Made by a program: the position numbers and the translations under genes. A stretch of 63,249 nt of DNA, counting the filler, from Hyphochytrium catenoides (taxonomy: Eukaryota; Protista; Hyphochytriomycota): NCBI GenBank assembly GCA_900088475.1. It is 6 parts of 6 records of this genome, joined end to end, with 100 filler letters (N's around TTAATTAATTAA, not from the genome) between each part and the next. Parts side by side here need not be neighbours in the genome. Positions count along the whole stretch, not along the records: positions 1 to 18,655 come from FLMG01000578.1; 5 more parts are not named here. One strand, 5' to 3'. Positions 1 through 18,655 of this stretch are shown in pieces; position 1 is the stretch's first letter; each line of letters begins with the position of its first letter. The notes beneath the pieces are model-generated. The model was given only the letters and a program-made list of their open reading frames with translations, was not told the origin of the DNA and searched no databases.

Positions 1-1887
1 TACGCCAGCCACAAAGGCCCGAGCCGGGCCAGCGAGCTGCTTGATAAAGCTCAGGAACTCCAACAGGCCGGAGCTCTCTTCATCCCGCGGTTTGTGGCAG
101 CCACAGCGCGATTTATGAGAAAGAATGGAACTCTGAAGAAGTTTCCCTTTCTCTGCGAGTCTCTCTCGTCCGACTTTGCCGCTTTCTCTAGTCCTGTGGC
201 ACAGCGCTGGTTGGCGCTCGGTTATCTCCTGGCGGGAGAGCCAGAGACAGCACACCAAGCCGCTGAGCTAGGAAAGAAGGCAGAAGAATGGGGAAAGGGA
301 GAAGGTTTGGACGCACTGGTAGACTATTATGTCCTAAGAAGAGATGCAAGCGGCCTTGAAGAACTGGAGGTCATTTGGCTAGAAGCGAGAGAGGGCCGAC
401 AAGTGGGAGAGAGCGTCTTCCTCTCTCTCCTTCGCGGCTATTTTCATTGTGAAAAAGAACAAGATGCATGGCGTCTCCTCTCTCTCCTGCGAGACAGACC
501 AGACATTGAGCGGACAACGAAGGCTATGGAGCGGCTGTGGAGCGAGCTCAAGAGAGGGGACCAAAGAGAAAGACTGCTATTGGAAGTTATGAGGCCGTGT
601 CACATCCCTCTGTCTCTCTCTATCATCCAGCAGCACGTTGAAGAGCTGATCCGTGTAAGAGACATGGACGGAGTCAGAGAGTTTGCGAGGCATCTAAGAG
701 AAGCGCCAAGCTGGAGACCAGGAAGAGGTGGCATCAGAAGGATTTTAGGGCTGTTCTCTCTCACAAATGCTGAATCTCTCGTCTCTATTATCGAGGCATA
801 CACAGAGCGAACAAGAGCTAACTTAGACAAAGAGGACTATCTCTTCCTGTTGAACCGCTGGGTGGCGAAGAGCCGTATAGACATAGCCGAACGCTTCTTG
901 GAGTGTCTGAGACAGCGCCACCTAGAGACGGTAGAATTGAAGGAAGGAGCTGAGCTCACGGATAAGCTCAAGATCTCTCTTTCGCCTCAGTTCTTTCTCC
1001 CTCTTCTTGACCATTACGCCCTAAGGTTAGAGCCAGACAAGGCCGCAAGGCTCATAGAAGTTTACCGGAAAGATCTCTGTGATTCTCGTTTGCTTCTCGT
1101 TGATCTGACTGCAGTGCTCAAAATCTATTGCCAAAGCTTCAGAATGAAGGACGCCAGAGCCTTGTTCTATAGAATCCGAGACAGTCATGGACTGGAACCA
1201 GACGTTGTCTGCCTTACTCTGCTTCTCCAGGCCTACGTGAGGGCAGGGATGGACGAAGAGGCGAAGACCTGCGAAGAAGAATTGAAGAGAGAGTTTTCTC
1301 TCGAGCCCGACGTCGTGACTTATACCGCCATTATTAAGGCCTACGCCGTCAGAGGAGAGTTGGATAAAGCGCTGAGAAGCCTAGAAGATATGCTCAGACA
1401 AGGGATCCCACCCTCTGTCTTTACCTTTGGCGTCCTGCTCAACGGCTGCGCAGAGAGAGGCAAAGGCGATTTGGCAGAGGAAATTCTTTCACAGGTGATG
1501 CCGCGGTGTAACGTACAGCCTTCTGCCCTCTGTCTTTCTCTCCTCTTGAAAGCGTATCTAACGGAAGGGAGAATAGATAAAGCAAAGGAAGTGATGCGGG
1601 AGCGCTTCGTTCAGTTTTCTCTCTCTCCCAATGAGCACGCCATTACCATTCTGCTTCGTGCCTTTGCAGAGAAGTTTGATATAGAAGGGGCGGAGTGGTT
1701 GGTGAGAGAGGTGATGGTGAAGCATGGCCTTTCTCTCTCTCCTGGCGTCCTCCAAGCGCTATTGAAGTTTCGACACCGGGTCGAAGGCCAGAAGAGAGTC
1801 GTCGAGTTGATCAAAGAGCTAAAAGAAGCAGAGGAAATGAGAGAAAAAGAGATGGACCAGGAAAGACCAAGCATAGGGAGCTCGTAG
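1..1887 (+). CDS. Pentatricopeptide repeat (PPR) protein, intronless, 5'-partial
   Basis: Frame is open from base 1 (YASHKGPSRASELL...). Tandem ~35-aa PPR motifs, e.g. PDVVCLTLLLQAYVRAG, PDVVTYTAIIKAYAVRGELDKALRSLEDMLRQGIPP, SVFTFGVLLNGCAERG. Stop TAG at 1885-1887. Confidence 0.9.
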   Translation, partial: YASHKGPSRASELLDKAQELQQAGALFIPRFVAATARFMRKNGTLKKFPFLCESLSSDFAAFSSPVAQRWLALGYLLAGEPETAHQAAELGKKAEEWGKGEGLDALVDYYVLRRDASGLEELEVIWLEAREGRQVGESVFLSLLRGYFHCEKEQDAWRLLSLLRDRPDIERTTKAMERLWSELKRGDQRERLLLEVMRPCHIPLSLSIIQQHVEELIRVRDMDGVREFARHLREAPSWRPGRGGIRRILGLFSLTNAESLVSIIEAYTERTRANLDKEDYLFLLNRWVAKSRIDIAERFLECLRQRHLETVELKEGAELTDKLKISLSPQFFLPLLDHYALRLEPDKAARLIEVYRKDLCDSRLLLVDLTAVLKIYCQSFRMKDARALFYRIRDSHGLEPDVVCLTLLLQAYVRAGMDEEAKTCEEELKREFSLEPDVVTYTAIIKAYAVRGELDKALRSLEDMLRQGIPPSVFTFGVLLNGCAERGKGDLAEEILSQVMPRCNVQPSALCLSLLLKAYLTEGRIDKAKEVMRERFVQFSLSPNEHAITILLRAFAEKFDIEGAEWLVREVMVKHGLSLSPGVLQALLKFRHRVEGQKRVVELIKELKEAEEMREKEMDQERPSIGSS

Positions 1888-1913: not shown

Positions 1914-4900
1914 TTATCCGCTCTGTCCAGCTGGTAGCTTCTCCTTTATGCTCTTGTTTGGAACAGGAGGCGTTGGCGGCAGAGATAGAGAGGGAGAGAC
2001 ACACACATACACACAAGCAGAAGGAAGACAGGGACCGTAAGTTCATGACGGAGAGCCCCGTGGATCGTCAAAGCTAGATAATCTCTCTCTCTCCCCCTGT
2101 TTTTCTCTCTCATACTGATTCTCCCTCTCCCTGTCACTCTCCTCCCATTCTTCTCTCTGTGTCTCTCTTCTCGGTTATTTCTTTCTCTTCGTTCTCTTTC
2201 TTGGGCATTTACCTTGTAGCTCTGATAATCTTGCTCTACCGGTGCTCTATCAGCTTTGTACATGATCTGATACGTGAGTTAACGAAGGAAAACCGTGAGA
2301 AGGCGGGATAACGTGGCAGAAAACTATCCTTATTCCTTGCTTCTTGGTATCTCAGCATAGGGCCTGGACTCCTCTGTCATCTCCCTGTGCTCCTCTCCTC
2401 TTGGCGAGGCAGGCACCCAGACCTCTCGTACTCTTACCTTCCTATCCTTCTGCTCCTCAAAGGCGCTCTGGTACAGCGAGAGCTTGGTTTGAAGATTTCT
2501 CTTCTGTTTTCTAAGTTCACCCTCGCTATTTGAGGACCGCGCGCCCTCTCCTCCGCCTCCAGCTCGGGCGCTGAGCTGCTCCTTGATGGCATTATACTCC
2601 ACGTACAGCTCCTTTATCTCTTCCTTATCCTCCCGGGTTGGCTACAAAAGGAAAAAAAAAGGTGCCCGTGAGTATGACAGAGTGGGGGCGAAATGGAGGA
2701 AGTAAACAAGCGCTAGCTGTGACATAGTGCAGAGAAAATATACTGCCCAAGGACGAAGAGCACTTCCCAACAACTTGGAAAAAGGGAAGGGCGATAGCTA
2801 AGAACGCCAGACATGTAAGGAGCTAAGAGAGTGTCATCAGCTCACTACTGTCTGAGAGACAGTGATGTCCGTCGTAAAACCCCCGATTAGAGAACGGGCT
2901 CTGAGAAACGTGCCAGGTCCTGAGGAGAGAGATGAAAGGAGAGGAAGTGTGTGTACCTTTCTACCATGCCGGTTCTCGAAGTCTGTGTCAAACTTCTTCA
3001 GTTTACTCTTGATGTCCCTCTTCTTTTTCACTAAGAACTCTACAGTGACCTGTCCATTGTCATCTAGTGCTTTAACGCCTCGTCCTCCTGCCTCCACGCT
3101 CTCTTTGGAGCTTCCTCCAGAGGTTTTTGACCGGGAGAGCTGCAATGTGTCCTGGAACTGCAGATTGAAAAGAAGAGGTTACGCTTTAAAGCAGGTGTAG
3201 GAGAGACATACACGTCAAGTCCGCTCGAGGATGGAAAGGGAGGTGAAGGCGACGTTTGCACAGAGCAATAGAGAGAGCAAGGACCAAGAGAGATACTCTG
3301 ATCATGGACCAACTGTCTGCATAGACTGTTGATGAGCTAAGCTGATAGAGACAAATTTAAGGGCCAGCAGTAGGATAGGCCTAACAGAGACATTTGGCAC
3401 AGAGACTTGTCACAGATCCATCCTAGGGGAGAGAAGGAAAATGATAGCGTACCGCTGTGGTGAGAGACTCATGAGCATGTCCAGCTATGAAGAGGTTGAC
3501 AGTCCTTGAGATGAGATGATTCATGACCATCGAGTCTTCCCGCTTACGATTTGATATTGAAAGAATAGGAGGAGGCTCATGCGCCTGAGGCAAAGCAGTG
3601 CCCATCTTGGCTTAGTAAACAGCAGCGGACAAAGCTAGGGCTAGCGAACTATACAGCCGACACAAACTGAGCACGTCAATCATACCAGATAGCATGAGAA
3701 GAGAGCAGGGCAAAACGCAACCGGCAGAGAGAGAAGAGAGAGCGAGATTTAAACGATAGGGCGGCGCAGAATACGTCCATGCAAAAGTTCGGATGAAGAA
3801 CTATGGGCTAGCGAACTCAGTCTGTTAGGTGTGCCAACCCCTCCGTTTTATCAAGCTCACATGGAAGGTAAGCTGCTCTTGGTTGACTATTAGGGAATGG
3901 ACTACGGCCGTGATCTGAGGCAGAGCTTGTACATGCCTAAGTGATTTGTATGCCGTTCCTTCGGGCTTACATAATACCGGAGCGAATGCTTGAGCTAGAA
4001 CTAGAGCTGCAAGCAGAGTAAGAGGGCGAATAGCAGAGCCATTTGCCACGATACAAGGAGGAAAAAGAATTGAGCGCGATAATCGAAGAAGATCCAAAGA
4101 CAGCATCGCAGAGGTGAAAGCCAGGGAAGTTAGTATAGGGCAAGTATAGAAGAGAAAAGGAAAGCGTCATTCTCATAGAAGAGAGACGAAGACCTCGTTC
4201 ATAAAGAGCGTGACGACATACACTAGGATAAGCGATAAGAAAGGGTCAAGGACAGCGCTTTGTGCGGAAGAGAGGAGCTCTGGCGTCAAGGCAGGAAGGG
4301 AGGAGAAGACACTGAGCAGGTCAAGCATCTGCCAACGTACAAGTCAGCCGATTACTATCTTCGTGCTGCAAAAGATGGCGAATAAGCTTCAAGATGGCCT
4401 CTAAGATGGCCACCGAGTCGCCAGGGAGACTATTGAGCAGCTTCTGCAGAGCCGATAGTGGAGAGCTGTCTGCATTCTGCTGAATATTCTCTAGAGCATG
4501 AAACAGAGACAGGTGAGGCGAGAAAAGAAAGAACGCCGCCAGAGGAGGCTAGAAGACAAAAGAAAAAATCACGGTGTTTCTAGACATTGAGCCCTCTAAA
4601 AATTCTGGCAGCAATGACACTGCACTCAGGCACCCGCCATAACATTCTATCCTGATCGTGTTTCTTCGACTCTTGAACTCTCTCCCCCGTCTTTCTTGTA
4701 CACATCATACTGTCTAGGTGAGCGCGCCTTCCTTCGAAAGCTAACCCCTCCTCAATCTCTCTCTCTCTCTGTCTCATGCCCAGCCGCCCTGCGATCCGGC
4801 CGCAAGCTCTCTCTACCCCTTCCTTCCGTCTTCCTCTTCTGTGGCTCCGTCTTACCTCCCAGCTTGAGGACGTCTCCGTACAATTTGAAACCCAGAATGG

Positions 4901-5581
4901 GCTCAAAGCGCTCTCTTAGATAGAAGAGCAGAAGTTCAGCTACCACGTGTGGGTCACTCACGTCTGCAAGCTTAGGGATTCTCTCTTCAACAAGATATTG
5001 CCGTGGAAAGACAGAGGGGCAAAGAAGCGTCAGCTTGGATCCCAAGAGAAAGAGTAAGCTAGGGATAGAAAGAGAGAAGCACGGAACCTTGATGGTGTGC
5101 CAAGGAGCGCTGGCACTTGGATTTGTAGGCTTAAGGGTAAGCCGAGAGAGAGAGAACGACGGGTAAACGCGACTAAATGCCCTTACCTCCCATAAAGGAC
5201 TCATACAGCTCCTTAACTAACGTTAGGTTTGCCGGAACAGTGAACAAGCCAGGCGTGTTCAAGGCTGCGGAAGAGAGCACACCGAGTTCGGCAGAAATAG
5301 AGGTTGGTATATGTGTTAGGGCAAACCGAGGTAGGAAGCAGTCGCAGACGAACGTGGATAAAGGCAATTCGCTAGAAGGTCCATCAGATCATAGATGGAG
5401 GCAAAACAGCACGCCTTAGCCGCAGTCTCTTACCTCTCTCTTTTAGATAATCGGAACACTTTATAACCAGCGGGGCAACAGTAGGGCCCGCCGGTCCTCC
5501 CTGCAAGGGCCTGCAGCGCGGAGCCAGCACCGGGCTGGCGATCCCTAACAGAGGTGGAATTTCTGGCGAGCGGTGCTCCAT
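1914..5581 (-). CDS. RhoGAP-domain protein with FAM13-like C-terminal repeats (about 10 exons)
   Basis: GT-AG exons join in frame: PLVIKCSDYLKER|ALNTPGLFTVPAN..., DPHVVAELLLFYLRERFEPILGFKLY, LLNSLP...LIRHLLQHEDSNRLT, LAQAFAPVLCKP (RhoGAP fold). Followed by KKKRDIKSKLKKFDTDFENRHGRK|PTREDKEEIKELYVEYNAIK and a second similar repeat (FAM13 type). Last exon SIKEKLPAGQSG*. Start ATG at 5581 is tentative. Confidence 0.8.
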
Positions 5582-6388: not shown

Positions 6389-6423
<35 letters not shown>

Positions 6424-8449
6424 TCCTTTCTCTCTCTCTCTTTCTCTCTCTCTCTCTTTTTCTTTCTCTCTTTCTCTCTCTTCCCTTTCCTGCGAACTGT
6501 CAGCTCTCTATCTCCTGTTGTCTTCTTCAGAACATCATCTTCTTCAGCTGCCTCCGCCGGCCCTCATTATCTTTATGTCCCCCGTTGTTATTACCCTTTA
6601 GCAGCAAGGACTACGGACAAAGTTCTTGAAAGCAAGGCGATCCTGAAGCGGCATTTGACATGAAGCGAGGGAGGAGGACGTGAGAATTTGCCCTGGCGTC
6701 AATGCTAAGCTCTATTGACAGCCTCGCTGTTGTCTGGATACTAACTGCCTAGGTAAGGGTCGGAAGTCGTCTGTCAGGACCGGTGTGAAGAAGAAAAGAT
6801 AATTTTGTTTGCTTACGGAAGGAACGGAGCCCTGCTCAGCAACCCAGTTTGCATCTAAGATGGTCGCCATATATACTGCTGTACGAGCTAATTGCTGAAT
6901 ACACGTGCACCAAAAAGATTCCTTCTGCCACTCTACTCGCAGCTAGATTCTTCTTGTCTCTGCTCCACCTTCGGACTCCTTGGATAGAAGTAAACAGATG
7001 GGGCCCACGGATAAATCTCTGCAAAGTGCCTTGAAAGACAAGGACCCGTTGGCAACTTCCTTCTCTCTACTCCTCAAGAATGAGCGTGGACTGATGACAT
7101 ATGACAGCATGATAGGAAGCTCAGATTAGACGGGAAAGACAGAGCTGCGCCCACGAGAGGGAAGATAATATGCAGGAGGCCCCTTGTGGCGTAGTAAAGT
7201 AAAAAAAGTAGTAGTTTGCTAGGAGGTGGATGATTTAGAGAAAAGAAACCGCTGATGGTGCTGATGAAAACGAGAAGAAATAGAAGGAGCGCAGGCAAAC
7301 TCCAGCGATAGTTCATACATGTGACTAAGTCGCACTGATGTTTTCCAATGTAGCTTGTCTCATAATGAGTCACATCTTTGCTTGGTAGGTAGAGAGTAAA
7401 GTATTGAGCGGGATACTGCGAGAGGTTCTATCTTAGGACCAGTTGACTCGTGCTCGGGGAACGAGGGTTAGCTTCGGAAGACGGACCTGGTTCCAGGTAC
7501 TTTTGGAAACGGCATAAGTTTGAAACAGGATGGTATGGTGCGAAACGAATGATAGTTGGACAAGTGGCTGGCATGATGCTGCACTTCATGTCTCTTCTTG
7601 TCAGGTGTGGAAGAAGTTTCCAGATTATATCTAAGTCCTCAAGAGTCGGACAAGAAAGAGGGGTCGTGCAGGATCGCGGTAGCTATGTCTAATTGCCATT
7701 CGTTCTGCATCATACCTTCCCTCACTATCTTCCTCTGCCACTCTTGTCCCCACTTTCTATCTCTAGTGACACTGTTTGGACGAAGAATGGGAGTTCTCGT
7801 GCTGTTATCGAAAACGAGAAGAGCTGTTAGGGGCCAGGTGACAGGTGACTGAGCTCCAAGCACATCTCAGGGCCAACCCTTATGATCGTAAGACGAATGG
7901 TGTTCTGCTGCGTGAGTTGAGAAGCAAGGAGATGTCACATGCGTCTTCTGACGGGGACGGCAGGCCACGAATGATCGATGATAAGATGCACTTGCCGCTT
8001 GCCACTGATGGTCTCCCGCAGGGAGCTTTGGCTCTTCATAAACAGCCCACAGCATCCTGGGTATCGTGGGTAACTCATTTTTTAAAGAGTTGGAACAGTG
8101 CGCACCCAGGTTAGAAGTGAGCTAATTATATCCTAGACTTGTCGTATCCAAGCCGCACCCAGGTTATCTAAATGGGTTGGTGGCAAGATACTGTCCGGAT
8201 AGAGATTTTGTGACTTTCTCTTCAATCTTCATCAGTCTTCAGGATAAAGAGAAAGATCGAAGGGCGGCTATTCTTCGTGGGTTGACTGAAAGACTGCTCC
8301 CTTTCTCTCGCTCTCTTTCTCTCCTTCTACCCGGAGAAGATCGTCTCGGTCGTTCAAAGTACCAGCCGAGAAACAATTTTGCCGTACCCGACATCCTCTC
8401 TCCTTTATAATAGCCGTGGGCGAGTCTTTGCATCCAGGGAGCCATCACA

Positions 8450-8832
8450 ATGAGGCAAAGAGAGCTCTTTAAGACGATCACCAAAGCTGTCTCAGAAGCC
8501 ACGACCCGGAAGAAATTCACTTCTACCCATGTTCGCCTTACCATGGGAGCTCTCGCAGACGTAATGAAAGACTCTCTCGCCCAGAAGGTAAGTCTCAGCT
8601 GCTAGGCTTTGCAATGTGAGATAGTCTATCTCTAGTGCAAGTCTAATGGCTGTTCTCGTCTACTCAGGGCTCATTTACCATTCCGAAGGTTGGTAGATTC
8701 AAGATGAATAAGCGGTCTGGACAGATTACGTTCCTTCCGATGAAGAGCGTCCTAGAGAGCGAGTCCCTCGTAGAGACTTCATCAGACGAATCTGGTGGAG
8801 AGTCATCAGACGACTCGGATGGAGAGCATTGA
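8450..8832 (+). CDS. HU/IHF-fold (bacterial histone-like) small protein, 100 aa, 2 exons (8450-8587, 8668-8832)
   Basis: 80-nt phase-0 intron with GTAAGT donor, CTAAT branch point and CAG acceptor. Product: MRQRELFKTITKAVSEATTRKKFTSTHVRLTMGALADVMKDSLAQK|GSFTIPKVGRFKMNKRSGQITFLPMKSVLESESLVETSSDESGGESSDDSDGEH. This follows the HU pattern MxxxEL-helix, helix ending ...SL, strand GxFTIPxVGxF, strand ITFxP. Confidence 0.65.
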
Positions 8833-9559: not shown

Positions 9560-11640
9560 GTCTAGCTCTTCCAACCTGGCACGCACAAAGCATCTTCGTG
9601 AATGGACTCACTCCATGATACATATAAGGCACGGCAACGAAGGTATAAATATGGCTTGAAGAGAAAGAGATGCAGTGCTTTCCCGAATGGCCGCACAGCT
9701 AGGGGATAAGAAGGACAAAGCTGCGCTATTGATGATGCATACGTTGCTGACCTCGATAGAGAGTAAACCACTTCATCGGCACAATAGGAAGAAGGGGCAA
9801 GGGCCAGTTGGAGAAAGGGCAATGAGTGGATACCTAATCTTCTGTGCATAGAAGTCCAAGACGATGTACAACGACCAAGCATAGCACGACACCCTAGTCC
9901 ATTTTCCAGCATCCATGTTGATCAACTTCGGCGCTCTGGTCGGAGGTGTAAGAATAATAAGCGTTAGGAGAGAAAGGGTGTTCGACATGGCTACATGCCC
10001 TACATATAGCCGATCCAGGAGAAGTGCTCGATAGGGTTATATAACACCATGGACCAGGCCTGAAGTCGTACTACCGCCCTTAGACGAGGATCCTACAGCG
10101 TTATTTAGGTCAACAAACTTGAGAAGGACCGTTATCATCTCATGAGTAGATACCTTCCAGCTGCCTAGCCAAGAATCATGCAGTGCTGCCTCCAGCGCAT
10201 CCGTAGCCCCAAAGAAACGGGTCACCATTCTTGCCATACTAATCTCCCCGCCTAGCTTACACAGACTCTCTGCGCGAGCAGTACGCTGGTCAACGCGGAG
10301 GCGATGTGTGTTCTCTCCTATACCTCCACTTACCTGATAGAGGAGTGTGCTTACCCCCGTTCCTTATCAGCATCGACTGCCCCGCGAGGCCAAGGCTGTA
10401 ACAGATTATCTTGTGCACCTTGTCCGCTCCAACACTGTCGTGGTGAAGCGGACATACTTTTGCAATGCATCCTCCTTCGACATTACGACTATCAAGGAGC
10501 CTCGAGGTCGAGGTAGCAATGGAGTTAAAGTAGCTTTAATCTGGACCCCGAGGAAGTGTTCAGCCTGACGTTGAGCCTTCCCAAGCTAAGGAAGCACTTG
10601 AAGCATGTGACAGACACCTTTCTACTCTAGTAGCTTATATTCCCCGACAACAGGATGACTTATCGTTCAGCTCTCTAAGTTACTGGGCTCCTGACAGAGG
10701 GCTTGACGACCGGCGTCTGGCAATGAGCAAGGCCTCAGTGCTAGCAACCTCGAGTCTATTGTCTGCTGCTGAAGATCATACCTTCAGGATCAACTATGAA
10801 GCCAATAAAAGCTTCGATAAAGCCGTTGTAAAATTCTGCGGGGGTTTTCTTGAAGCCTTGAGCTTGGCCCCATCATCCTCTTCCTCCTCCTCTTCTTTCT
10901 TATACTTTCTCTTGTCATGGACACTACTCCCCCAGGAGTTGGAAGGCACTATTGTGCATTCTGATACTCTACGTGCGGCAATATTGTGCGCTCCCGTGCG
11001 ATATGGTAATGCGCTTAAGGGAGCGGAATACAGCAACTCTTAACAAAACGAACGAGTCAATTGCCGATAAAGAAGTGAGGAAAGCGCACTTCAAGTGCCC
11101 CAAGATAAGACGATGCCATCATCTTATGCGACAGCTTTGGCCTGCAGACTGCAGACCCAACTTCGAGACTCGGCAAGCTCTTACATCTCGTCCCACCAGA
11201 CAAGATGGGTCCTTGCGGCTCCTTGTAGAGCTCTCGATAGAGGACGAGTCTCACCACGGTCCGATGTGGAGTCTAGTCGAGTTCTTGATAAAGGGAAGCC
11301 GCAGTTTTAGGGCACATGGTCCATACATTGACACTACCTTGTCTTGCCGGCCTGCGTGCAGCTCAGTGATTGTTCCAGAAGGAGCATTGTCTAGTAAGTA
11401 ACGTGGATGTCGCATAGGAGAGCAGCTTCTCATATGGGTGTCACTGTTATCACGGACATACTGGTACATCAGATGCTTGGCGATTGCTAAACCCCTTAGG
11501 GTGGCCTGGCGTCATATGACCGTTCTAATATGGTCTCTATGGGCAACTGAGGCAAAGGCCTTTCGTAGCACATGTTCACCTCTTATTCCTCTATTCAGCG
11601 ATACAGGCTTTGTGTTCCTTCCCTATCGCCCTCGCTAGCA
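9560..11640. mobile_element. Possible decayed DIRS/Ngaro-like (tyrosine-recombinase retrotransposon) RT/RNase H fragments
   Basis: + strand: RQDGSLRLLVEL and AWRHMTV...LFSDTGFVF (RT-like). - strand 10037-10237: ATDA...STHEMITVLL..VDLNNAVGSSSKGGS (DIRS RNase H-like). No intact ORF, and the orientations are inconsistent. Confidence 0.3.
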
Positions 11641-11669: not shown

Positions 11670-13882
11670 TTACCGGTCCCGCTCTTGAGCTTTCTCTAGG
11701 TTCTGTGGACCTTTATCCTTCTTAGCTACGGCTGGTCGTAGTGGGTACTTTGTATAGATGTACGTGCTGGTTAGGACCAGGACCAGTGCAACCCATACAT
11801 TGTTCCCTAGAGACTTCTTGAAGAAAACATATTCTGTGAATCCAGTGATCATGATCCCAAATATAATTGCATAGCCTAGCAGAGGAGAGAGCATGAGTTC
11901 AGAAAGCTGATGCAGCAATGGTGGAGCCTTTCCCCTATGTCCTCTTATTTTCCGCGTTGCTCTCCGTTGGCGCGGCGAGCGACCTGAACTATATTTGCTT
12001 GCTTTCAACCCTCCGGGATTGGCAGCTCACAACTATTCTCTCACACAAACTTCCATTATCTCCCCATACCTTTCGCCACACCGCCCGCGTACTTCGTAAC
12101 AAGCCCCACAAACAGCCCTCCTAAGGCGTTGCTCAGAATCGGGATGTACGCGTAAGAGTTGGATGACCCGAGCCCCCGGGTCCGGAGATCGTACAGCTGA
12201 GAGGGATGCGAAAGAAGACTGAGTGCACATATGCAAGGAGGGACCCCAGGGCAACCCGACATGATCCGTGGCCATTTTCTGGGTCTCTTTCTCAACTCTT
12301 CACTAAACACTCTCTTTGCGGGATCTTTCGGTCTATGACAGGCCCATCTTCCCGTACAAACGAAATCGAAACCGTATCTGGACATACCTCGTCAGGATTC
12401 TGTGCCAACAGGGCTAAGAGTCCAAGAGAGCCAATTCCAGCCAGCTCCATGCTGAAGACCATGCTATTTCGAGCGTGGGTCTGAAGCGTGCGCTGAGAGA
12501 GAGCAGCGGCTACTCCCGAAAGAACGGAGGCTCCCAAAACGCAGCTGAAGCCTGTCATCGTTGTGCTTCCATTCTTTTTCATCTTGCTAAAGTCAGCAAG
12601 AATAATGCTGCTTAGAGCGAGGAGTAGAAGCGCTCCTGCGAGAGTTACAGTCGACTCAANNNNNNNNNNNNNNNNNNNNNNNNNNNNNNNNNNNNNNNNN
12701 NNNNNNNNNNNNNNNNNNNNNGCTGCTGCCACGCAATGCTGCTAAAGAGTCCCGAGCTCTGATAGACTCCGGCTTGAGAGGTCTCAGAGGATATTGGTAC
12801 AATAACAGCTATATCCTTACTGACCTATTTGCGGCTTGGATTGTCCTTTTCCCAGCAGAATGTAGATGAAGACAGCGGTCCATATGATCTTTGTTTGGTT
12901 GACCAAGTTGAAGATTAGAGGGTCCGTCTGTTGGTAGGCGATCTGGGTGAGGATGTTTTGGCCCGCATAGATCAAAGAAGGCATCCCTGCAGCCACAAGA
13001 GCGCCTAAAAAAGGTATGTTAGACATGGAACCCGTAGCTCCATAAATATTGAAGAAAGGGACGTCGTGGTCGCACGGGAAGAGACAGAACGACCGCAGGA
13101 TGCGCAAAGAGGATTAAGGCTGAAGACTTGTTGAGCTGGGCATGGATTAACGCAGCAAGAGTGGGGCGTGAAATCCAACGCACAAGAGGAGCTCTTTGAA
13201 AGATGTAGATGGCTCTTGTTCCTCCATACTTGATACGGTCCAGCTGCTGATCGCCCTCTTGGCCTCGCCACTGGCTAGCAAGGTCACTCCTGCGATGAGT
13301 ATCTTAGCCAGCTCACAGAGCAGAACGAGGGCCTTCTTGTTTGCATCCGGACTGATATATTTCTGCGTCAAGATGGGCTGCAGGCCAAACTGGAGAGCTA
13401 GAAGCAAGATAAAGAGAAGGCCTACACATTTCGAAGCGATGAACTGTCAGGACTTCCTCGAGCACAAGTTTAAGGCTCTAGCAGAAGGAGGGAAGGGCAG
13501 TAGATCACGCCGAGGGCTAACTAAGAATGGAAGAGAAGAGAGGGAGGGCCCGACAGGAAGCATCACGACACGGACAACAGGGAAGACACAAGCACTGGTA
13601 CTGCGACTATGCAAGAGAGCACGAACTCCGATAGGAGAAAGAAGGCAGTTGGACGAGACTGTTATAGTAAGGAACGGACCTTTGGCCGCGTTTGAAGAGC
13701 CTTGCGCCTTCATCCTTTGAAGCCGCGGGAAAGTCTCTAGGGGACAGCGGCACAGACTCCTCGGGCGCGATGCGATGAGACCCTGGACTTACCCTTCTTC
13801 CCCACGGCGATTGCTCCCCTTTCGCCTCTACACGTATCAGTCTATGTGGGCCAACCCTCTTCTCCTCACGTCTGTCAACCAT
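11670..13882 (-). CDS. Nucleotide-sugar transporter, SLC35A family (UDP-Gal/CMP-sialic acid type), multi-exon, contains an N gap
   Basis: Motifs LLALQFGLQPIL, VLLCELAK, PSLIYAGQNIL...FNLVNQTKIIWTA, LSGVAAALSQ, NALGGLFVGLVTKYAGGVAKG|YAIIFGI. GT-AG junctions, e.g. TCA A|GTATGG...TTTTAG|GC. Confidence 0.9.
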
Positions 13883-14335
13883 GGACGCCGCCACTTCTCA
13901 AAAGGCACGGGAGGACAGCTGAATAAGCAGCTACTTCGCTCTTGAGTGTCGACTGTGAGCATCAGTAAGTGGCGACTCTACTATACGTGTTGAGAAGAGT
14001 ATGGGGATGCTAAAAGGGAACAGGAGTGGGAAGAGAGAGACAGGAGATGGAGAGAGACAGAGAGAGAGAGAGAGAAAGAACGAGAGAGAAGAACGAGAGA
14101 GAGGGAGAGAGAGAGAGAGAGAGAGACAGAGAAAGAGAGAGACAGAGAGAGAGANNNNNNNNNNNNNNNNNNNNNNNNNNNNNNNNNNNNNNNNNNNNNN
14201 NNNNNNNNNAGAGAGAGAGAGAGAGAGAAAAGGCCACAGGAAAGCCATTTGCGATCCTTCTTGCTCCAGAGAGAGACCTTGACCGACATATCGGAGCTAG
14301 CCGTTAGCCACCAACAAGTATATGGCAAGCATCCT

Positions 14336-15532: not shown

Positions 15533-17273
15533 TTACAATTCCAGCGCCATGATCATCGCCGCCAGAAGGAAAGACACCACACCCGCAGCTCTTATTGGAT
15601 CAGACGCCGAAGAGGAGTCCTGCTTGTTTGTTGTAGGCGCAGAGGAGGAAGGAGTACCATCTGTAGAAGGTCCTGGAGATCCAGTAGGGTCACTCTGCTG
15701 AGCCCCTTGAGTGAATGTCTTGTTCCATCCTGCCTCACAAGGGTAATTGGGATCATCCTCGCAGAACGAGACAGCAGATGCTCCGTCTTGAAGGGGAAAT
15801 TGTCGCAGATAATCAACGAGTAGCGGCTTCTCTGGCTGGGAGAGTATCCTATCTTTCGTAAAGTTCTGTCTTCCCATATAAACATGCTGGGAAGAATTGA
15901 CAATGTAATGAAGGACATTGTCACTGTTATTCACAAAGTATCCGAGCACTTCGCCTGACTGCTCATAGAACACCTTATCCGTGATGGAGCCGACAGGGAA
16001 CACGAGGGAAAGAGACTGAGGAATGCTAAGGTTCACGGCGGGAATCTTGCCCAGGGCAGACATCAAGCTCAGCCCCGTATAGAAGAGCTCCTGAGTGCTG
16101 TCAAACTTGGACTGCACAGCGACAAACGGAGTGCCCTTGTACTTTTGATGGATCCTGCTCGCCACTGAGTTAAACCAAAGCTTTTCTTCCTTGCATACGG
16201 CAAGCTCTTGCTCTGTCAATAGCTTGATCTCCAGCATCGTCTCACAGATTCCCATCTGCTTTAGCGCTGTGCCTTGATTGTCAGGAAGTACTGCTAGGCC
16301 GTAGGAGTCCAGGATGACAGCTCTCTGGCTGTCTTTCAATTCTTTATATTGCGTGAAAATGTAGTCGGCCCAGAGATGTCCACCGAGAGCACCAGCACTC
16401 TGTCCTGCAACCACCAATTTCTTGGGCTTGGGCATATTCTTGAAAGTCCACTTCAAGGCTGCGAGAGCGTTGTTATAGCCAAATTGATAGGACTCATCCT
16501 CCACAGTAGCCTTCGTTGTCTCGTTCTTGCCACTATAATGTCTCGTCGTGTTGCCCACGTGCAAGTCACCGCTGCAAAATCAGAGGTTAGACAGCGCGTT
16601 CATGGAGGCGACAAGAAGCAAAAAGAAGAAGAGACTTGTGGCAGCGACAGAGGAAAGCGAAGCCAGGCGAAGAATTCACGGCTAGTGAAGAAGAGAACAC
16701 TCAATGGCAACAACCGAACGACTAATAGAATCTAAGATCAACAGTTCTCGTCCTCTTCTGTCTCTCTGATGGGGCACCTCACCTGCAGTAGAGCACGCTG
16801 ACCTTCGTCCATCCATCGTATGGATTCTTGGGATCCTCCGTGGCAAAGATTCCTAGTTCAACGTCTGGAGAGGCGTTCGTAGTGCACAGCACATTGCTCT
16901 TCGGGGCATTTCGACTGCAGGTGCCAGGGAACCCTCTCTCTTTATCCAAGAAGCACGCGCCTCCGCCTTGGAAGTTAATAAGAAGGTTCTGTTCGGTCTC
17001 TCCTCGGCCTGGATAATAAATGAAGGCATACGGTTGGCCCCAAAGGCAGCTAGTGGAGCCTCCGGGGTAGATGAGCGTCCGGTTAGACTCGGCCAAGTCT
17101 TCTACGTCGCAAGGCTCACTCTCTGTGATGTTGCAGGAGTGCGCTGCTTGTACCTCCAGCTTACTGAAGCGCGGCTGGATGTACGGCCGCAGATCTTCAA
17201 TCGCCTCTACTGAGCCCTGCAGTGCCAGGAGTAACGACCCCAGAGAAAGACTTGCGACGGAGACTCGGCCCAT
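15533..17273 (-). CDS. Secreted pectin acetylesterase (PAE/Notum family, CE13), probably GPI-anchored; exons 17273-16783 and 16571-15533
   Basis: Signal peptide MGRVSVASLSLGSLLLALQGSVEA. Family motifs LLINFQGGGAC, NPYDGW..VLYCS|GDLHVG, GQSAG, SKFDSTQ, SSQHVY. S/T/P-rich spacer and a hydrophobic C-terminus with no cytosolic tail. Confidence 0.9.
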
Positions 17274-17929
17274 GATGACGACGGCAGAGAAAGACGCGCC
17301 GAAGAGGGCGGGAGGCGAAGCACCGCTGTGGTGTGAAGCTTGGGGAAAGTAGTAAAGTGGCGTCTCTATTACTTTTCCAAGGAGATAAGAGTCTCTTTCC
17401 TTCCCACTTCTCTTATGCACGCGTGTCTCTCTTCCTAGTAGGATCCTCCTTCTCTCTCGTGCACTGGGTCTGGGTCTTCATTATCTTAGGACGGGCGATG
17501 GAAGGAGAAGAAGAATCGAAGGTGATGGAGAAACATTCTCTCCTTTATTGGCCTTTCCTTCTCGCTCATCAGCCCCGTCCGGCCCAAGAAGATGGTGGGG
17601 ACATTGTAAGGAGCGGAAGATAAGTGACGTGTCTGAGACCAAGAAGAAAGAGAGCAGGAAGCCAGTTGAAGGTATGAGGTACACGGCGCATGGGAGAGAA
17701 GGAAAGAAAAAGAGAGGACAGATCAAAAAACATTGAGTGGGGAAGAGAGAGAGAGAGGGAGAAGGAGGAGAGAAAGAGAGAGAGAAAGGAAATAGGAGGC
17801 TATACTCGTACTAGCAAGAAGGAAAGAACACGATAGTACGAAGGTCACTGAGCTGGTGATGCAGGGGCGGTAATGGCCAATCCAACTGCAACAAGGCAGT
17901 ATGGCGGCAAGTCTCTAGAGCCACAAGAG

Positions 17930-17973
<44 letters not shown>

Positions 17974-18345
17974 CAGAGAGAGGAGAGAGAATGAGAGCAG
18001 TAGACTTCGTATGTCCAAGAGAAGAGAACTAGAGAACTTATCAAAAGAAGGAAAGACGACGTGGAGAGGTAGTTCTACAAAGTGGTACATGATGATGAGA
18101 AAAGATGGAGCAGCGAGACGAGAGAGAGAGAGAAAGATAAAAATTCTACTACAAGTAGCAGCAAGGTACACTCGAGGGTAAAAGAGAGGGACAAGAGGCA
18201 GAGAGACAGAGAGAGAAGAAAGAATGAGAGAAAAGAGAGAGCGTACAGAGGAGAGAGGGAAAGAGAGAGAGAAAGAGTGAGCGAAAGAGAGAGAGAGAAA
18301 AACGGAGAGAGAAAGAAAGAGAGAGAGAAAGAAGAAGCAAGAGAA

Positions 18346-18376
<31 letters not shown>

Positions 18377-18655
18377 AGAAGAGTGAGAGAGAAAGAGAGA
18401 GAGAGAAAGAGAGAGCAAGAGCGTGCAAGAGAGAGAGACAGAGAGAAAAAAGGTAAAGAGCTGCTGCTCGGCCATTTCTAGCCGTTTCAGGAACGACAAC
18501 AACCATGTCGGAGACGGATGGGGGGCCACCCAGGACTCACACATTCACTCAGGAAATTGTTTCCCTAACATTATATTAGGGCGGCTCCCTTGCTAGGTTG
18601 ATAGATGATGTCCGCGTGGGCCCCAGCAGGCCAGAGGAAATATTCAGTCCACGTC

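What the first reader, a model, noticed from the sequence alone, without database searches (positions are those of the whole stretch)
8450..8832. Nuclear, spliced gene for an armless HU/IHF-like protein with an acidic tail
Seen in sequence: a clean 80-nt GTAAGT/CTAAT/CAG intron joins a 100-aa ORF that is absent from the ORF track. It follows the HU fold (MxxxEL helix, second helix, GSFTIPKVGRF strands, ITFLP strand). The roughly 25-aa DNA-embracing beta-arm with the intercalating proline (RNPxTG) is replaced by NKRSG, and a Ser/Asp/Glu-rich tail follows. There is no targeting presequence after this ATG. Established: eukaryotic HU-fold proteins include plastid/apicoplast HU, dinoflagellate HLPs (which share GxFTIP) and HU-CCDC81. 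Inference: a domesticated bacterial- or virus-derived chromatin or dimerisation module in a stramenopile, possibly auto-inhibited by or chaperoning through its DNA-mimic tail. This is the best candidate for a new system in the window.
Basis: partly seen in the sequence, partly recalled or inferred. Interest (0 to 1): 0.75.

Follow-up and report, generated by a model that had tools for sequence, protein, structure and literature searches.

The report
Armless HU-fold protein gene, stramenopile family
This is a real two-exon nuclear gene for a 100-residue protein with the bacterial HU "histone-like" fold whose DNA-clasping arm is cut back to a short basic turn and which carries an acidic tail; it belongs to a small family, for which I found no description, seen in oomycetes and the alga Triparma, and its function has not been tested.

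Summary
Joining 8450-8587 to 8668-8832 across an 80-nt GTAAGT/CTAAT/CAG intron gives an intact 100-aa protein.

- **Family:** about 30 database clusters of 83-133 aa proteins align with it end to end. The named ones are oomycetes (Pythium, Globisporangium, Lagenidium, Nothophytophthora) and Triparma. Start, stop and the gap-free spacing across the splice junction match these homologues.
- **Synteny:** the gene has the same convergent PEX11 neighbour as four homologous loci.
- **Fold:** it passes Pfam's Bac_DNA_binding cut-off (24.3 vs 22.4 bits). A family profile hits solved Hbb and HU structures (1e-6 and 2e-5). An AlphaFold model (core pLDDT 84-90) matches almost only HU/IHF chains (Z 6.9).
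- **Arm:** HU residues about 56-77, including the intercalating proline, are replaced by a 4-6 residue basic turn. This holds in every family member.
- **Charge:** the core is strongly basic (pI about 11). The tail is Ser/Asp/Glu-rich and disordered.
- **Targeting:** no presequence in the window or the oomycete loci.

Function is inferred, not shown. The most likely reading is an HU-type dimer that binds nucleic acid through its basic body without wrapping or kinking it, modulated by the acidic tail. No RNA evidence, viral relative or identifiable donor lineage was found. I rate it a new variant of a known superfamily.

The parts
8404..8412 (+). TATA-like TTTATAATA, 38-46 nt upstream of the ATG. 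Possible core promoter element, which would imply a very short 5' UTR and no upstream coding exon.
   Evidence: Read directly from the sequence; inference only. An in-frame stop lies at 8411-8413, with no ATG before 8450.
8450..8587 (+). Exon 1: codons 1-46, encoding helix 1 (res 3-17), the family-specific basic loop TTRKK (codons 18-22, 8501-8515) and helix 2 (res 21-45).
   Evidence: Translation. M1 aligns with the start of the homologues. Helices come from the AlphaFold model. Pfam PF00216 covers residues 10-66.
8588..8667 (+). Phase-0 spliceosomal intron, 80 nt: GTAAGT donor, CTAAT branch-like motif at 8643-8647, CAG acceptor.
   Evidence: Removing it restores the conserved, gap-free L43-x3-G47 spacing. 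Similar introns occur in the neighbouring genes. No RNA reads were available.
8668..8757 (+). Exon 2, HU core part: strands 48-51, 55-59 and 66-70, the stub turn N60-Q65 (8707-8724) that replaces the arm, and the start of the C-terminal helix (res 72-81).
   Evidence: G55, F57 and F68 are invariant and G64 is near-invariant.
8758..8832 (+). Exon 2, acidic Ser/Asp/Glu tail (S77-H100) plus the TGA stop (8830-8832). It contains a 24-nt (8-codon) tandem duplication at 8779-8826.
   Evidence: Composition. pLDDT is below 50 for residues 78-93. Tandem repeat. Tails are net acidic in 15 of 18 aligned members.

Best explanation
**Shown.** 8450-8832 is an intact two-exon nuclear gene. It encodes a 100-aa member of a small family found in stramenopiles that has the HU/IHF (DNABII) fold. 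In this family the extended DNA-clasping beta-hairpin, with its intercalating proline, has been cut back to a 4-6 residue basic turn. About 7 residues carrying a conserved basic motif (T-x-R-K-K) are inserted between helices 1 and 2. A disordered Ser/Asp/Glu tail is appended. The protein is a stand-alone single domain, with no N-terminal targeting sequence in the window or in the oomycete loci.

**Inferred.** It forms an HU-type homodimer through the conserved helical stalk and aromatic core (F57, F68). It sits in the nucleus or cytosol. It binds nucleic acid through its strongly basic body and stub hairpins, without wrapping or kinking the DNA. The acidic tail has six casein-kinase-2-type sites. 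It may compete with nucleic acid for the basic surface, as the HMGB1, HMGA and SSB tails do, or it may tether basic partners such as histones.
For: **Gene reality and orthology**
- End-to-end homologues in an exhaustive scan and in profile searches.
- Alignments A1 and A2 show conserved start, stop region and invariant residues.
- A PEX11 gene lies convergent and downstream in the window (9845-10342 minus strand), as in loci L001, L005, L006 and L007.

**HU fold**
- PF00216 scores 24.3 bits, above its 22.4 cut-off. All 9 members of A1 match PF00216 at E <= 0.1, best 4e-7.
- The family profile against solved structures gives Hbb 1e-6 and HU 2e-5, with HU 56-77 missing.
- The AlphaFold model has core pLDDT of 84-90.
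- The Foldseek top 20 are all HU/IHF/Hbb-type entries at probability 0.91-1.00, and most of the top 50 are as well.
- VIA-align gives Z 6.9, rmsd 3.2 over 72 residues, and the top 39 rows are all in this superfamily.
- Atlas neighbours of homologue P0052 are all HU clusters.

**Basic character retained**
- Core pI is 10-11 and net charge +5 to +11.
- The stub region has 3-6 K/R per 22 residues across the family (4-6 in 17 of 18 members) and 5 in this protein, or 2.3 per 10. PMC5499826 reports 2.6 per 10 for classical HU and 1.3 per 10 for HU-CCDC81.
- Lysines equivalent to HU K80/K83 and the basic residues at the base of the arm align.

**No presequence**
-.
Against: - There is no expression or splicing data: none was listed.
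- Dimerisation, localisation and nucleic-acid binding were not tested and cannot be tested with these tools.
- The arm supplies most of HU's DNA affinity, so a body-only protein may bind DNA poorly or not at all.
- The other known short-clasp clade, HU-CCDC81, is proposed to bind proteins rather than DNA (PMC5499826). Three of 11 family members score slightly higher on Pfam HU-CCDC81_bac_2 than on PF00216.
- Three members lack an acidic tail, so the tail is not essential to the family.
- Both Triparma genes have an in-frame 24-residue N-terminal extension that looks like a mitochondrial presequence.
Confidence: 0.55

Rival explanations
1. A protein-binding adaptor, not a nucleic-acid binder. 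As proposed for HU-CCDC81, the shortened clasp of the dimer would grip a protein partner, for example a cytoskeletal or flagellar one. The acidic tail would be a second interaction surface.
For: - The hairpin length matches the Pfam HU-CCDC81_bac_2 model, which aligns contiguously through the stub. Eight of 9 members hit it, best E 1.9e-5.
- PMC5499826 reports several HU-CCDC81 paralogues in oomycetes and argues that they bind protein cargo.
- A sea-urchin sperm doublet-microtubule chain appears among the weaker structural matches (8snb_1K, Z 3.6). I did not verify what that chain is.
Against: - All HU-CCDC81 Pfam scores (15-25 bits) are below the 35-bit cut-off. HU-CCDC81_euk_1 is hit by only 2 of the 9 members of A1, at E 0.026 or weaker, and no eukaryotic domain-2 model appeared in the tables.
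- Basic density in the stub is like classical HU, not reduced as in CCDC81.
- It is a single ~100-aa domain with no coiled coil, EF-hand or dynein fusion.
- Classical HU chains match the model better (Z 6.9 vs 3.6).
Confidence: 0.25
2. A mitochondrial nucleoid protein: an HU-derived packaging factor for mtDNA in stramenopiles, analogous to the horizontally acquired HupA proposed for Acanthamoeba mitochondria.
For: - Both Triparma genes carry an in-frame upstream ATG that adds 24 residues rich in R, S and A and free of acidic residues, which looks like a presequence.
- There is a precedent for an HU in a mitochondrion (PMC13632651).
- The core is very basic.
Against: - In the window and in loci L001, L005 and L007 an in-frame stop with no ATG lies just upstream of M1. 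L006 has only a 13-residue extension.
- From general knowledge, oomycete genes are intron-poor, so a hidden upstream exon is unlikely there.
- The Acanthamoeba HupA keeps the DNA-binding residues of bacterial HupA, whereas this family has lost the arm that carries most of them.
- In my judgement, a long acidic phospho-type tail is unusual for a matrix nucleoid protein.
Confidence: 0.1
3. Not a functional stand-alone gene. It would be a chance ORF, a pseudogene, or one exon set of a larger gene such as a plastid-targeted HU or a CCDC81-type protein.
For: - No transcript evidence is available.
- The protein itself is absent from the 15-billion-protein collection: there is no self-hit.
- AG dinucleotides at 8413 and 8437 could in principle serve as acceptors for an upstream exon.
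Against: - The frame is intact and every invariant family residue is present.
- Start and stop sit where they do in the intronless oomycete orthologues of 96-103 aa.
- PEX11 synteny is conserved.
- The antisense and upstream ORFs have no family match.
- Oomycetes, as far as I know, have no plastid.
Confidence: 0.05

Closest known systems
Classical bacterial HU / IHF / Hbb (Pfam PF00216, DNABII)
   Same: - Same fold order: helix, helix, three strands, C-terminal helix.
- Passes the PF00216 cut-off.
- Keeps the G-x-F turn and the aromatic core (F57, F68).
- Keeps the basic residues at the arm base and the K-F-K-P-x-K segment.
- About 90-100 aa and single-domain.
   Different: - The distal beta-arm (HU about 56-77), with R58/R61-type residues and the intercalating proline, is deleted.
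- About 7 residues are inserted in the helix 1-helix 2 loop, carrying a conserved TxRKK...H motif.
- An acidic Ser/Asp/Glu tail is added, where some bacterial HUs have basic tails.
- The gene is eukaryotic, nuclear and contains an intron.
HU-CCDC81 clade (Burroughs et al. 2017, PMC5499826)
   Same: - An HU fold with a truncated hairpin tip. Its C-terminal copy averages about 76 residues, similar to the core here.
- Present in eukaryotes, including oomycetes.
- Weak Pfam similarity to HU-CCDC81_bac_2, contiguous through the stub.
   Different: - Eukaryotic CCDC81 has two tandem HU domains fused to long coiled coils, EF-hands or dynein, and has lost positive charge in the clasp (1.3 basic per 10 residues).
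- This family is a single ~100-aa domain with 2.3 basic per 10 residues, an acidic tail, and sub-threshold Pfam scores.
Organellar eukaryotic HUs (red-algal and apicoplast HU; Acanthamoeba mitochondrial HupA, PMC13632651)
   Same: HU-superfamily proteins encoded or used by eukaryotes.
   Different: - The Acanthamoeba HupA is reported to retain the conserved DNA-binding residues of bacterial HupA and to be mitochondrial. The red-algal HU localises to chloroplasts.
- This family lacks the arm. It has no presequence in the window or in the oomycete loci.
- It occurs in oomycetes, which lack plastids.
Architectural DNA-binding proteins with acidic tails (HMGB1/2, HMGA, bacterial and phage SSB); a functional analogy from general knowledge only
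   Same: A small basic nucleic-acid-binding module followed by a disordered acidic tail, often phosphorylated by casein kinase 2, which in those proteins modulates binding or recruits partners.
   Different: The folds are unrelated. The analogy was not tested here.

Membership tests
HU/IHF (DNABII) superfamily | Bihelical stalk, three-stranded sheet and C-terminal helix | tested here: met
   AlphaFold elements are H3-17, H21-45, E48-51, E55-59, E66-70 and H72-81. Foldseek's top hits are HU/IHF at probability about 1.0. VIA-align gives Z 6.9, rmsd 3.2 over 72 aligned residues.
HU/IHF (DNABII) superfamily | Sequence match to Pfam PF00216 at the curated cut-off | tested here: met
   The query scores 24.3 bits against a 22.4 cut-off, E 3.8e-5. 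All 9 members of A1 match at E <= 0.1. Of the 11 proteins scored individually, 7 reach the cut-off. The family profile hits solved Hbb and HU structures at 1e-6 and 2e-5.
HU/IHF (DNABII) superfamily | Extended beta-hairpin 'clasp' with an intercalating proline | tested here: not met
   HU 56-77 is replaced by about 4 residues in the HMMER alignment. The model has a 6-residue turn, N60-Q65. There is no RNPxTG motif.
HU/IHF (DNABII) superfamily | Obligate dimer that binds DNA | not testable with these tools
   Only indirect support: the stalk hydrophobics and F57/F68 are conserved, and the core pI is about 11.
HU-CCDC81 clade | Truncated hairpin tip | tested here: met
   The HU-CCDC81_bac_2 model aligns through the stub: residues 38-74 match profile positions 28-63 of 70.
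HU-CCDC81 clade | Pfam HU-CCDC81 models at their curated cut-offs | tested here: not met
   HU-CCDC81_bac_2 scores 14.9-24.9 bits against a cut-off of 35. HU-CCDC81_euk_1 scores at most 14.5 against 26.1. No eukaryotic domain-2 model was listed.
HU-CCDC81 clade | Loss of positive charge in the clasp region (about 1.3 basic residues per 10) | tested here: not met
   The query has 5 K/R in 22 residues (2.3 per 10), and the family range is 3-6. The reference values come from PMC5499826. My segment boundaries may differ from theirs.
HU-CCDC81 clade | Tandem HU domains within larger architectures (eukaryotic versions) | tested here: not met
   It is a single domain, and members are 83-133 aa. In the exhaustive search the only long hits were repeat adhesins unrelated to HU.
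HU-HIG clade | Pfam PF18291 at its cut-off; extra N-terminal hairpin and C-terminal strand | tested here: not met
   It scores 19.9 bits against a 26.2 cut-off. The model has no extra strands.
Plastid- or apicoplast-targeted HU | N-terminal targeting sequence and a full-length arm | tested here: not met
   An in-frame stop with no ATG lies upstream in the window and the oomycete loci. The arm is deleted. The family occurs in oomycetes, which lack plastids.
   No hit named by a source was a dinoflagellate protein at E <= 1e-3.

The most novel reading that the evidence does not exclude
A bacterial-type HU was recruited to the stramenopile nucleus and remodelled into a non-bending, body-only chromatin or RNA binder. 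The changes are loss of the arm, a new basic loop, and a phospho-regulated acidic tail. It would have been conserved since before oomycetes and ochrophytes diverged. That would make it a second case of an HU-fold nuclear protein in eukaryotes, unrelated in origin to the dinoflagellate HLPs, and one with a new way of engaging DNA.
Probability: 0.25. Interest if true: 0.8.

Novelty: new variant of a known kind. Interest (0 to 1): 0.6.

Why it matters
As far as I know, HU-fold proteins in eukaryotes have been described in three settings: organellar nucleoid proteins, dinoflagellate nuclear HLPs, and the centrosomal or ciliary HU-CCDC81.

This family is a fourth kind. It is stand-alone, lacks a presequence, lacks the arm and carries an acidic tail. 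It is conserved in both plastid-bearing and plastid-less stramenopiles, including genera that contain important plant and animal pathogens (Pythium and its relatives).

It also works as a natural experiment on what the HU body does without its arms. If the protein is nuclear, it bears on how bacterial chromatin proteins get re-used in eukaryotic nuclei.

In practical terms, the gene is missed by annotation here, and its homologues are labelled 'hypothetical'.

Tried and rejected
- **RNA evidence:** The look-up of sequencing runs listed no run, so read laying could not be used.
- **Word-index protein search with the single query:** blank.
- **Single-sequence search of solved structures:** only chance RRM-like ribosomal hits at E of about 0.1. 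These were superseded by the profile search.
- **Giant proteins at the top of the exhaustive search (P0001 and others, E down to 4.5e-25):** these are summed weak matches of a strand-turn-strand plus Ser/Asp pattern to tandem repeat units in giant proteins. They look like bacterial cadherin- or VCBS-type adhesin repeats, though that identification is mine and was not checked. I rejected them as homologues. The sub-threshold Pfam CshA_repeat hit has the same cause.
- **Viral origin:** the IMG/VR scan found nothing. BFVD gave only ordinary phage HUs, all with E above 1e-3.
- **Two metagenome-contig scans:** both found nothing.
- **Antisense ORF 8239-8544 and upstream ORFs 8177-8410 and 7845-8114:** no family match.
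- **Paralogues in the window:** none found.
- **Literature:** no paper describes this family. The supplement of PMC5499826 is not held.
- **Triparma extension:** comparing the two Triparma loci to test it for coding constraint was uninformative, because they are about 99% identical.
- **Source organism:** it could not be named. The protein tree only places the window's protein outside the Pythium/Globisporangium/Nothophytophthora clade.

Full report
**1. What is in the sequence**

- On the + strand, ATG 8450 opens a frame that runs 46 codons to 8587.
- It is followed by GTAAGT. A CTAAT motif lies at 8643-8647, and a CAG ends at 8667.
- The frame resumes in phase 0 at 8668 and runs 54 codons to the TGA at 8830-8832.
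- Unspliced, the frame stops five codons into the intron (ORF 8450..8605).
- The window is clearly eukaryotic nuclear DNA. It carries these other genes:
  - a PPR-repeat gene (94-1887);
  - a RhoGAP fragment;
  - a two-exon pectin-acetylesterase/Notum-like gene;
  - a multi-exon PEX11 gene.
- Introns in the PAE and PEX11 genes are about 60-210 nt, with GT, a CTAAC-type motif and AG. The proposed 80-nt intron is therefore typical of this genome.

**2. The gene is real**

- The word-index search was blank.
- The exhaustive HMMER scan of 1.84 billion representatives found seven small proteins of 83-133 aa that align over essentially the whole 100 residues. Examples are P0014 at E 2.6e-9, P0030 at 2.9e-7 and P0057 over 1-100 to 1-100.
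- Profile searches with their alignment raised this to about 30 clusters.
- Every member that carries a name is a stramenopile:
  - Pythium insidiosum and P. oligandrum;
  - Globisporangium splendens and G. polare;
  - Lagenidium giganteum;
  - Nothophytophthora;
  - Triparma verrucosa and T. strigata.
- In alignment A2, M1, L43, G55, F57 and F68 are invariant, and H27, G47 and G64 are nearly so. The window's protein has all of them.
- The splice junction (K46|G47) falls inside the gap-free L43-x3-G47 spacing. The oomycete loci examined encode this stretch without an intron, so homology validates both the donor and the acceptor.
- Start and stop also coincide with those of the homologues.
- Synteny is an independent line of evidence. 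A PEX11 gene lies immediately downstream on the opposite strand in Nothophytophthora (L005), P. oligandrum (L006), G. splendens (L007) and the environmental contig of P0030 (L001). tblastn finds PEX11 exons at 9845-10342 on the minus strand of the window.
- No RNA run could be listed, so the splice is supported by comparison, not by reads.

**3. The fold is HU**

- The protein passes Pfam's curated cut-off for Bac_DNA_binding: 24.3 against 22.4 bits, residues 10-66 on profile positions 6-59 of 90.
- All nine members of A1 match that family at E <= 0.1, best E 4e-7.
- A profile of the family hits solved structures of Borrelia Hbb (1e-6), Thermus HU (2.4e-5), Thermotoga HU (4.3e-5) and E. coli HU and IHF.
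- An AlphaFold2 model built with the family alignment has pLDDT 84-90 over the core. Its elements, in HU order, are helix 3-17, helix 21-45, strands 48-51, 55-59 and 66-70, and helix 72-81. The tail is disordered.
- Foldseek's 20 best PDB matches are all HU/IHF/Hbb-type entries, with probability 0.91-1.00 and target-normalised TM up to 0.7. Most of the top 50 are too. The best matches are to chains whose arms are not resolved.
- VIA-align gives Z 6.9, rmsd 3.2 Å over all 72 residues of E. coli HU beta2. Its first 39 rows all belong to this superfamily.
- Atlas neighbours of homologue P0052 are HU clusters as well.

**4. The arm is gone, and this holds across the family**

- HMMER aligns the family in two blocks, to HU 1-55 and to HU 78-89. 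About four residues stand in place of HU 56-77.
- The model shows a six-residue turn, N60-Q65.
- The RNPxTG-type motif with the intercalating proline is absent from all members.
- The basic residues at the base of the arm are kept (K61 and R62 here), as is the K-F-K-P-x-K segment that leads into the last helix.
- Relative to Thermotoga HU there is also a 7-residue insertion between helices 1 and 2. It carries a conserved T-x-R-K-K ... H27 motif.

**5. Charge architecture**

- The core (residues 1-76) has 16 K/R against 5 D/E, pI 11.1. Family cores have pI 9.8-11.1.
- The stub region holds 3-6 K/R in 22 residues across the family, 4-6 in 17 of 18 members, and 5 here.
- Burroughs et al. report 2.6 basic residues per 10 in the clasp region of classical HU and 1.3 per 10 in HU-CCDC81 (PMC5499826). 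This family resembles the classical, DNA-binding type. My segment boundaries may not be identical to theirs.
- The tail (S77-H100) has 9 D/E, 8 S and no K/R. Tails are net acidic in 15 of 18 members but differ in sequence.
- In the window, part of the tail arose by a 24-nt (8-codon) tandem duplication at 8779-8826. This fits selection on composition rather than on sequence.
- Six Ser/Thr residues fit the S/T-x-x-D/E consensus for casein kinase 2 (S79, T83, S84, S88, S92, S96). This is read from the sequence using the established consensus.

**6. Targeting**

- An in-frame stop with no intervening ATG lies 12 codons upstream of M1 in the window. The same situation holds in L001, L005 and L007, and L006 has only 13 extra residues.
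- The family therefore generally lacks an N-terminal presequence. As far as I know, oomycetes have no plastid, which rules out the 'ordinary plastid HU' reading.
- The exception is Triparma. Both species have an in-frame upstream ATG that adds 24 residues rich in R, S and A. This looks like a mitochondrial presequence. The two loci are about 99% identical, so coding constraint could not be tested.
- Intron positions differ between lineages:
  - window: after codon 46;
  - Triparma: a 119-nt intron after codon 15 of the short form;
  - the oomycete loci examined: no intron.

**7. Relationships**

- No viral relative was found in IMG/VR, and BFVD gave only generic phage HUs.
- No bacterial HU reached E 1e-3 with the single sequence, so no donor can be named.
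- Pfam scores straddle classical HU and HU-CCDC81_bac_2. Eight of 11 proteins favour PF00216 and three favour the CCDC81 model, but none reaches the CCDC81 cut-off.
- The family is therefore a distinct short-clasp lineage of the superfamily. Its origin is unresolved. It may come from an independent bacterial acquisition, or from an excised CCDC81-type domain that regained charge.
- In a core-only tree the window's protein lies outside the well-supported Pythium/Globisporangium/Lagenidium/Nothophytophthora clade, alongside environmental sequences and Triparma.
- The shared PEX11 neighbour hints at an oomycete-like or related lineage. This is inference.

**8. Mechanism (inferred)**

- The conserved stalk and aromatic core predict an HU-type intertwined homodimer.
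- Without arms it cannot encircle or kink DNA.
- It does keep a very basic body, basic stubs, the lateral lysines, and a new basic loop.
- The likeliest activity is therefore low-specificity nucleic-acid binding through the body.
- The acidic, probably phosphorylated tail would either compete for that surface or bind basic partners.
- I put about 0.9 on the identity claims (a real gene, the HU fold, no arm, a stramenopile family). I put about 0.35-0.4 on the nucleic-acid-binding mechanism.
- The rivals are:
  - a CCDC81-like protein-binding role;
  - a mitochondrial nucleoid role;
  - at low probability, a non-functional or mis-modelled gene.

**9. Novelty**

- Full-text searches found no description of this family.
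- The nearest literature is the HU-CCDC81/HU-HIG survey (PMC5499826) and the Acanthamoeba mitochondrial HupA (PMC13632651).
- Members already exist in databases as 'hypothetical protein', or auto-labelled 'nucleoid DNA-binding protein'.
- I rate it a new variant of a known kind, of moderate to high interest. Experimental localisation and binding tests are the obvious next steps.

Noticed in passing
window 9830-10483 (minus strand): A multi-exon PEX11 gene lies convergent with the HU-like gene, with the two stop codons about 1 kb apart. The same HU-like/PEX11 tail-to-tail pair occurs in Nothophytophthora, Pythium oligandrum, Globisporangium splendens and an environmental eukaryotic contig. In Triparma the neighbour is BolA instead. 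This microsynteny is unusually durable given only 30-38% protein identity.
   Followed up: partly
L003 3929-4000 / L004 4001 region (Triparma strigata and T. verrucosa): The two annotations of the same gene differ only in the choice of start. The in-frame upstream ATG adds a 24-residue extension rich in R, S and A, which looks like a mitochondrial presequence. This hints at lineage-specific retargeting.
   Followed up: partly
window 8779-8826: A 24-nt tandem duplication (2 copies, 87% match) encodes the SSD[ED]S[GD]GE units of the acidic tail. The tail grows by repeat expansion.
   Followed up: yes
search result (P0001-P0013 and others): Giant repeat proteins, probably bacterial adhesins, outrank the true homologues in the exhaustive search. 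Many weak matches to residues about 36-93 are summed across their tandem repeat units. This is a trap for automated annotation of this family.
   Followed up: yes
window 94-1887 (+): A long open frame encodes a PPR-repeat protein (PPR_2 E 3e-29). Such proteins are usually organellar RNA-binding factors. The frame may continue upstream of the contig edge.
   Followed up: no
window 15533-17420 (minus strand): A pectin-acetylesterase/Notum-like esterase gene in at least two exons, with an intron of about 210 nt (GTGAGG...CTAAC...TTTGCAG) at roughly 16573-16782.
   Followed up: partly
window 4752-5204 (minus strand): An ORF with a sub-threshold RhoGAP match (20.7 bits against a 24.5 cut-off). It is probably one exon of a larger RhoGAP gene.
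   Followed up: no
window 6393-6481, 14032-14154, 17926-17997, 18200-18446; N runs 12660-12721 and 14155-14209: Long (TC)n and (AG)n microsatellites produce the spurious 'SLSLSL' and 'RERERE' ORFs. Two assembly gaps are present, and one of them abuts a microsatellite.
   Followed up: partly
P0071 (Pythium insidiosum) and P0083 (Triparma-like, ENA): Two database members are artefacts. P0071 has an internal duplicated segment. P0083 reads through the Triparma intron. Both should be left out of family alignments.
   Followed up: yes
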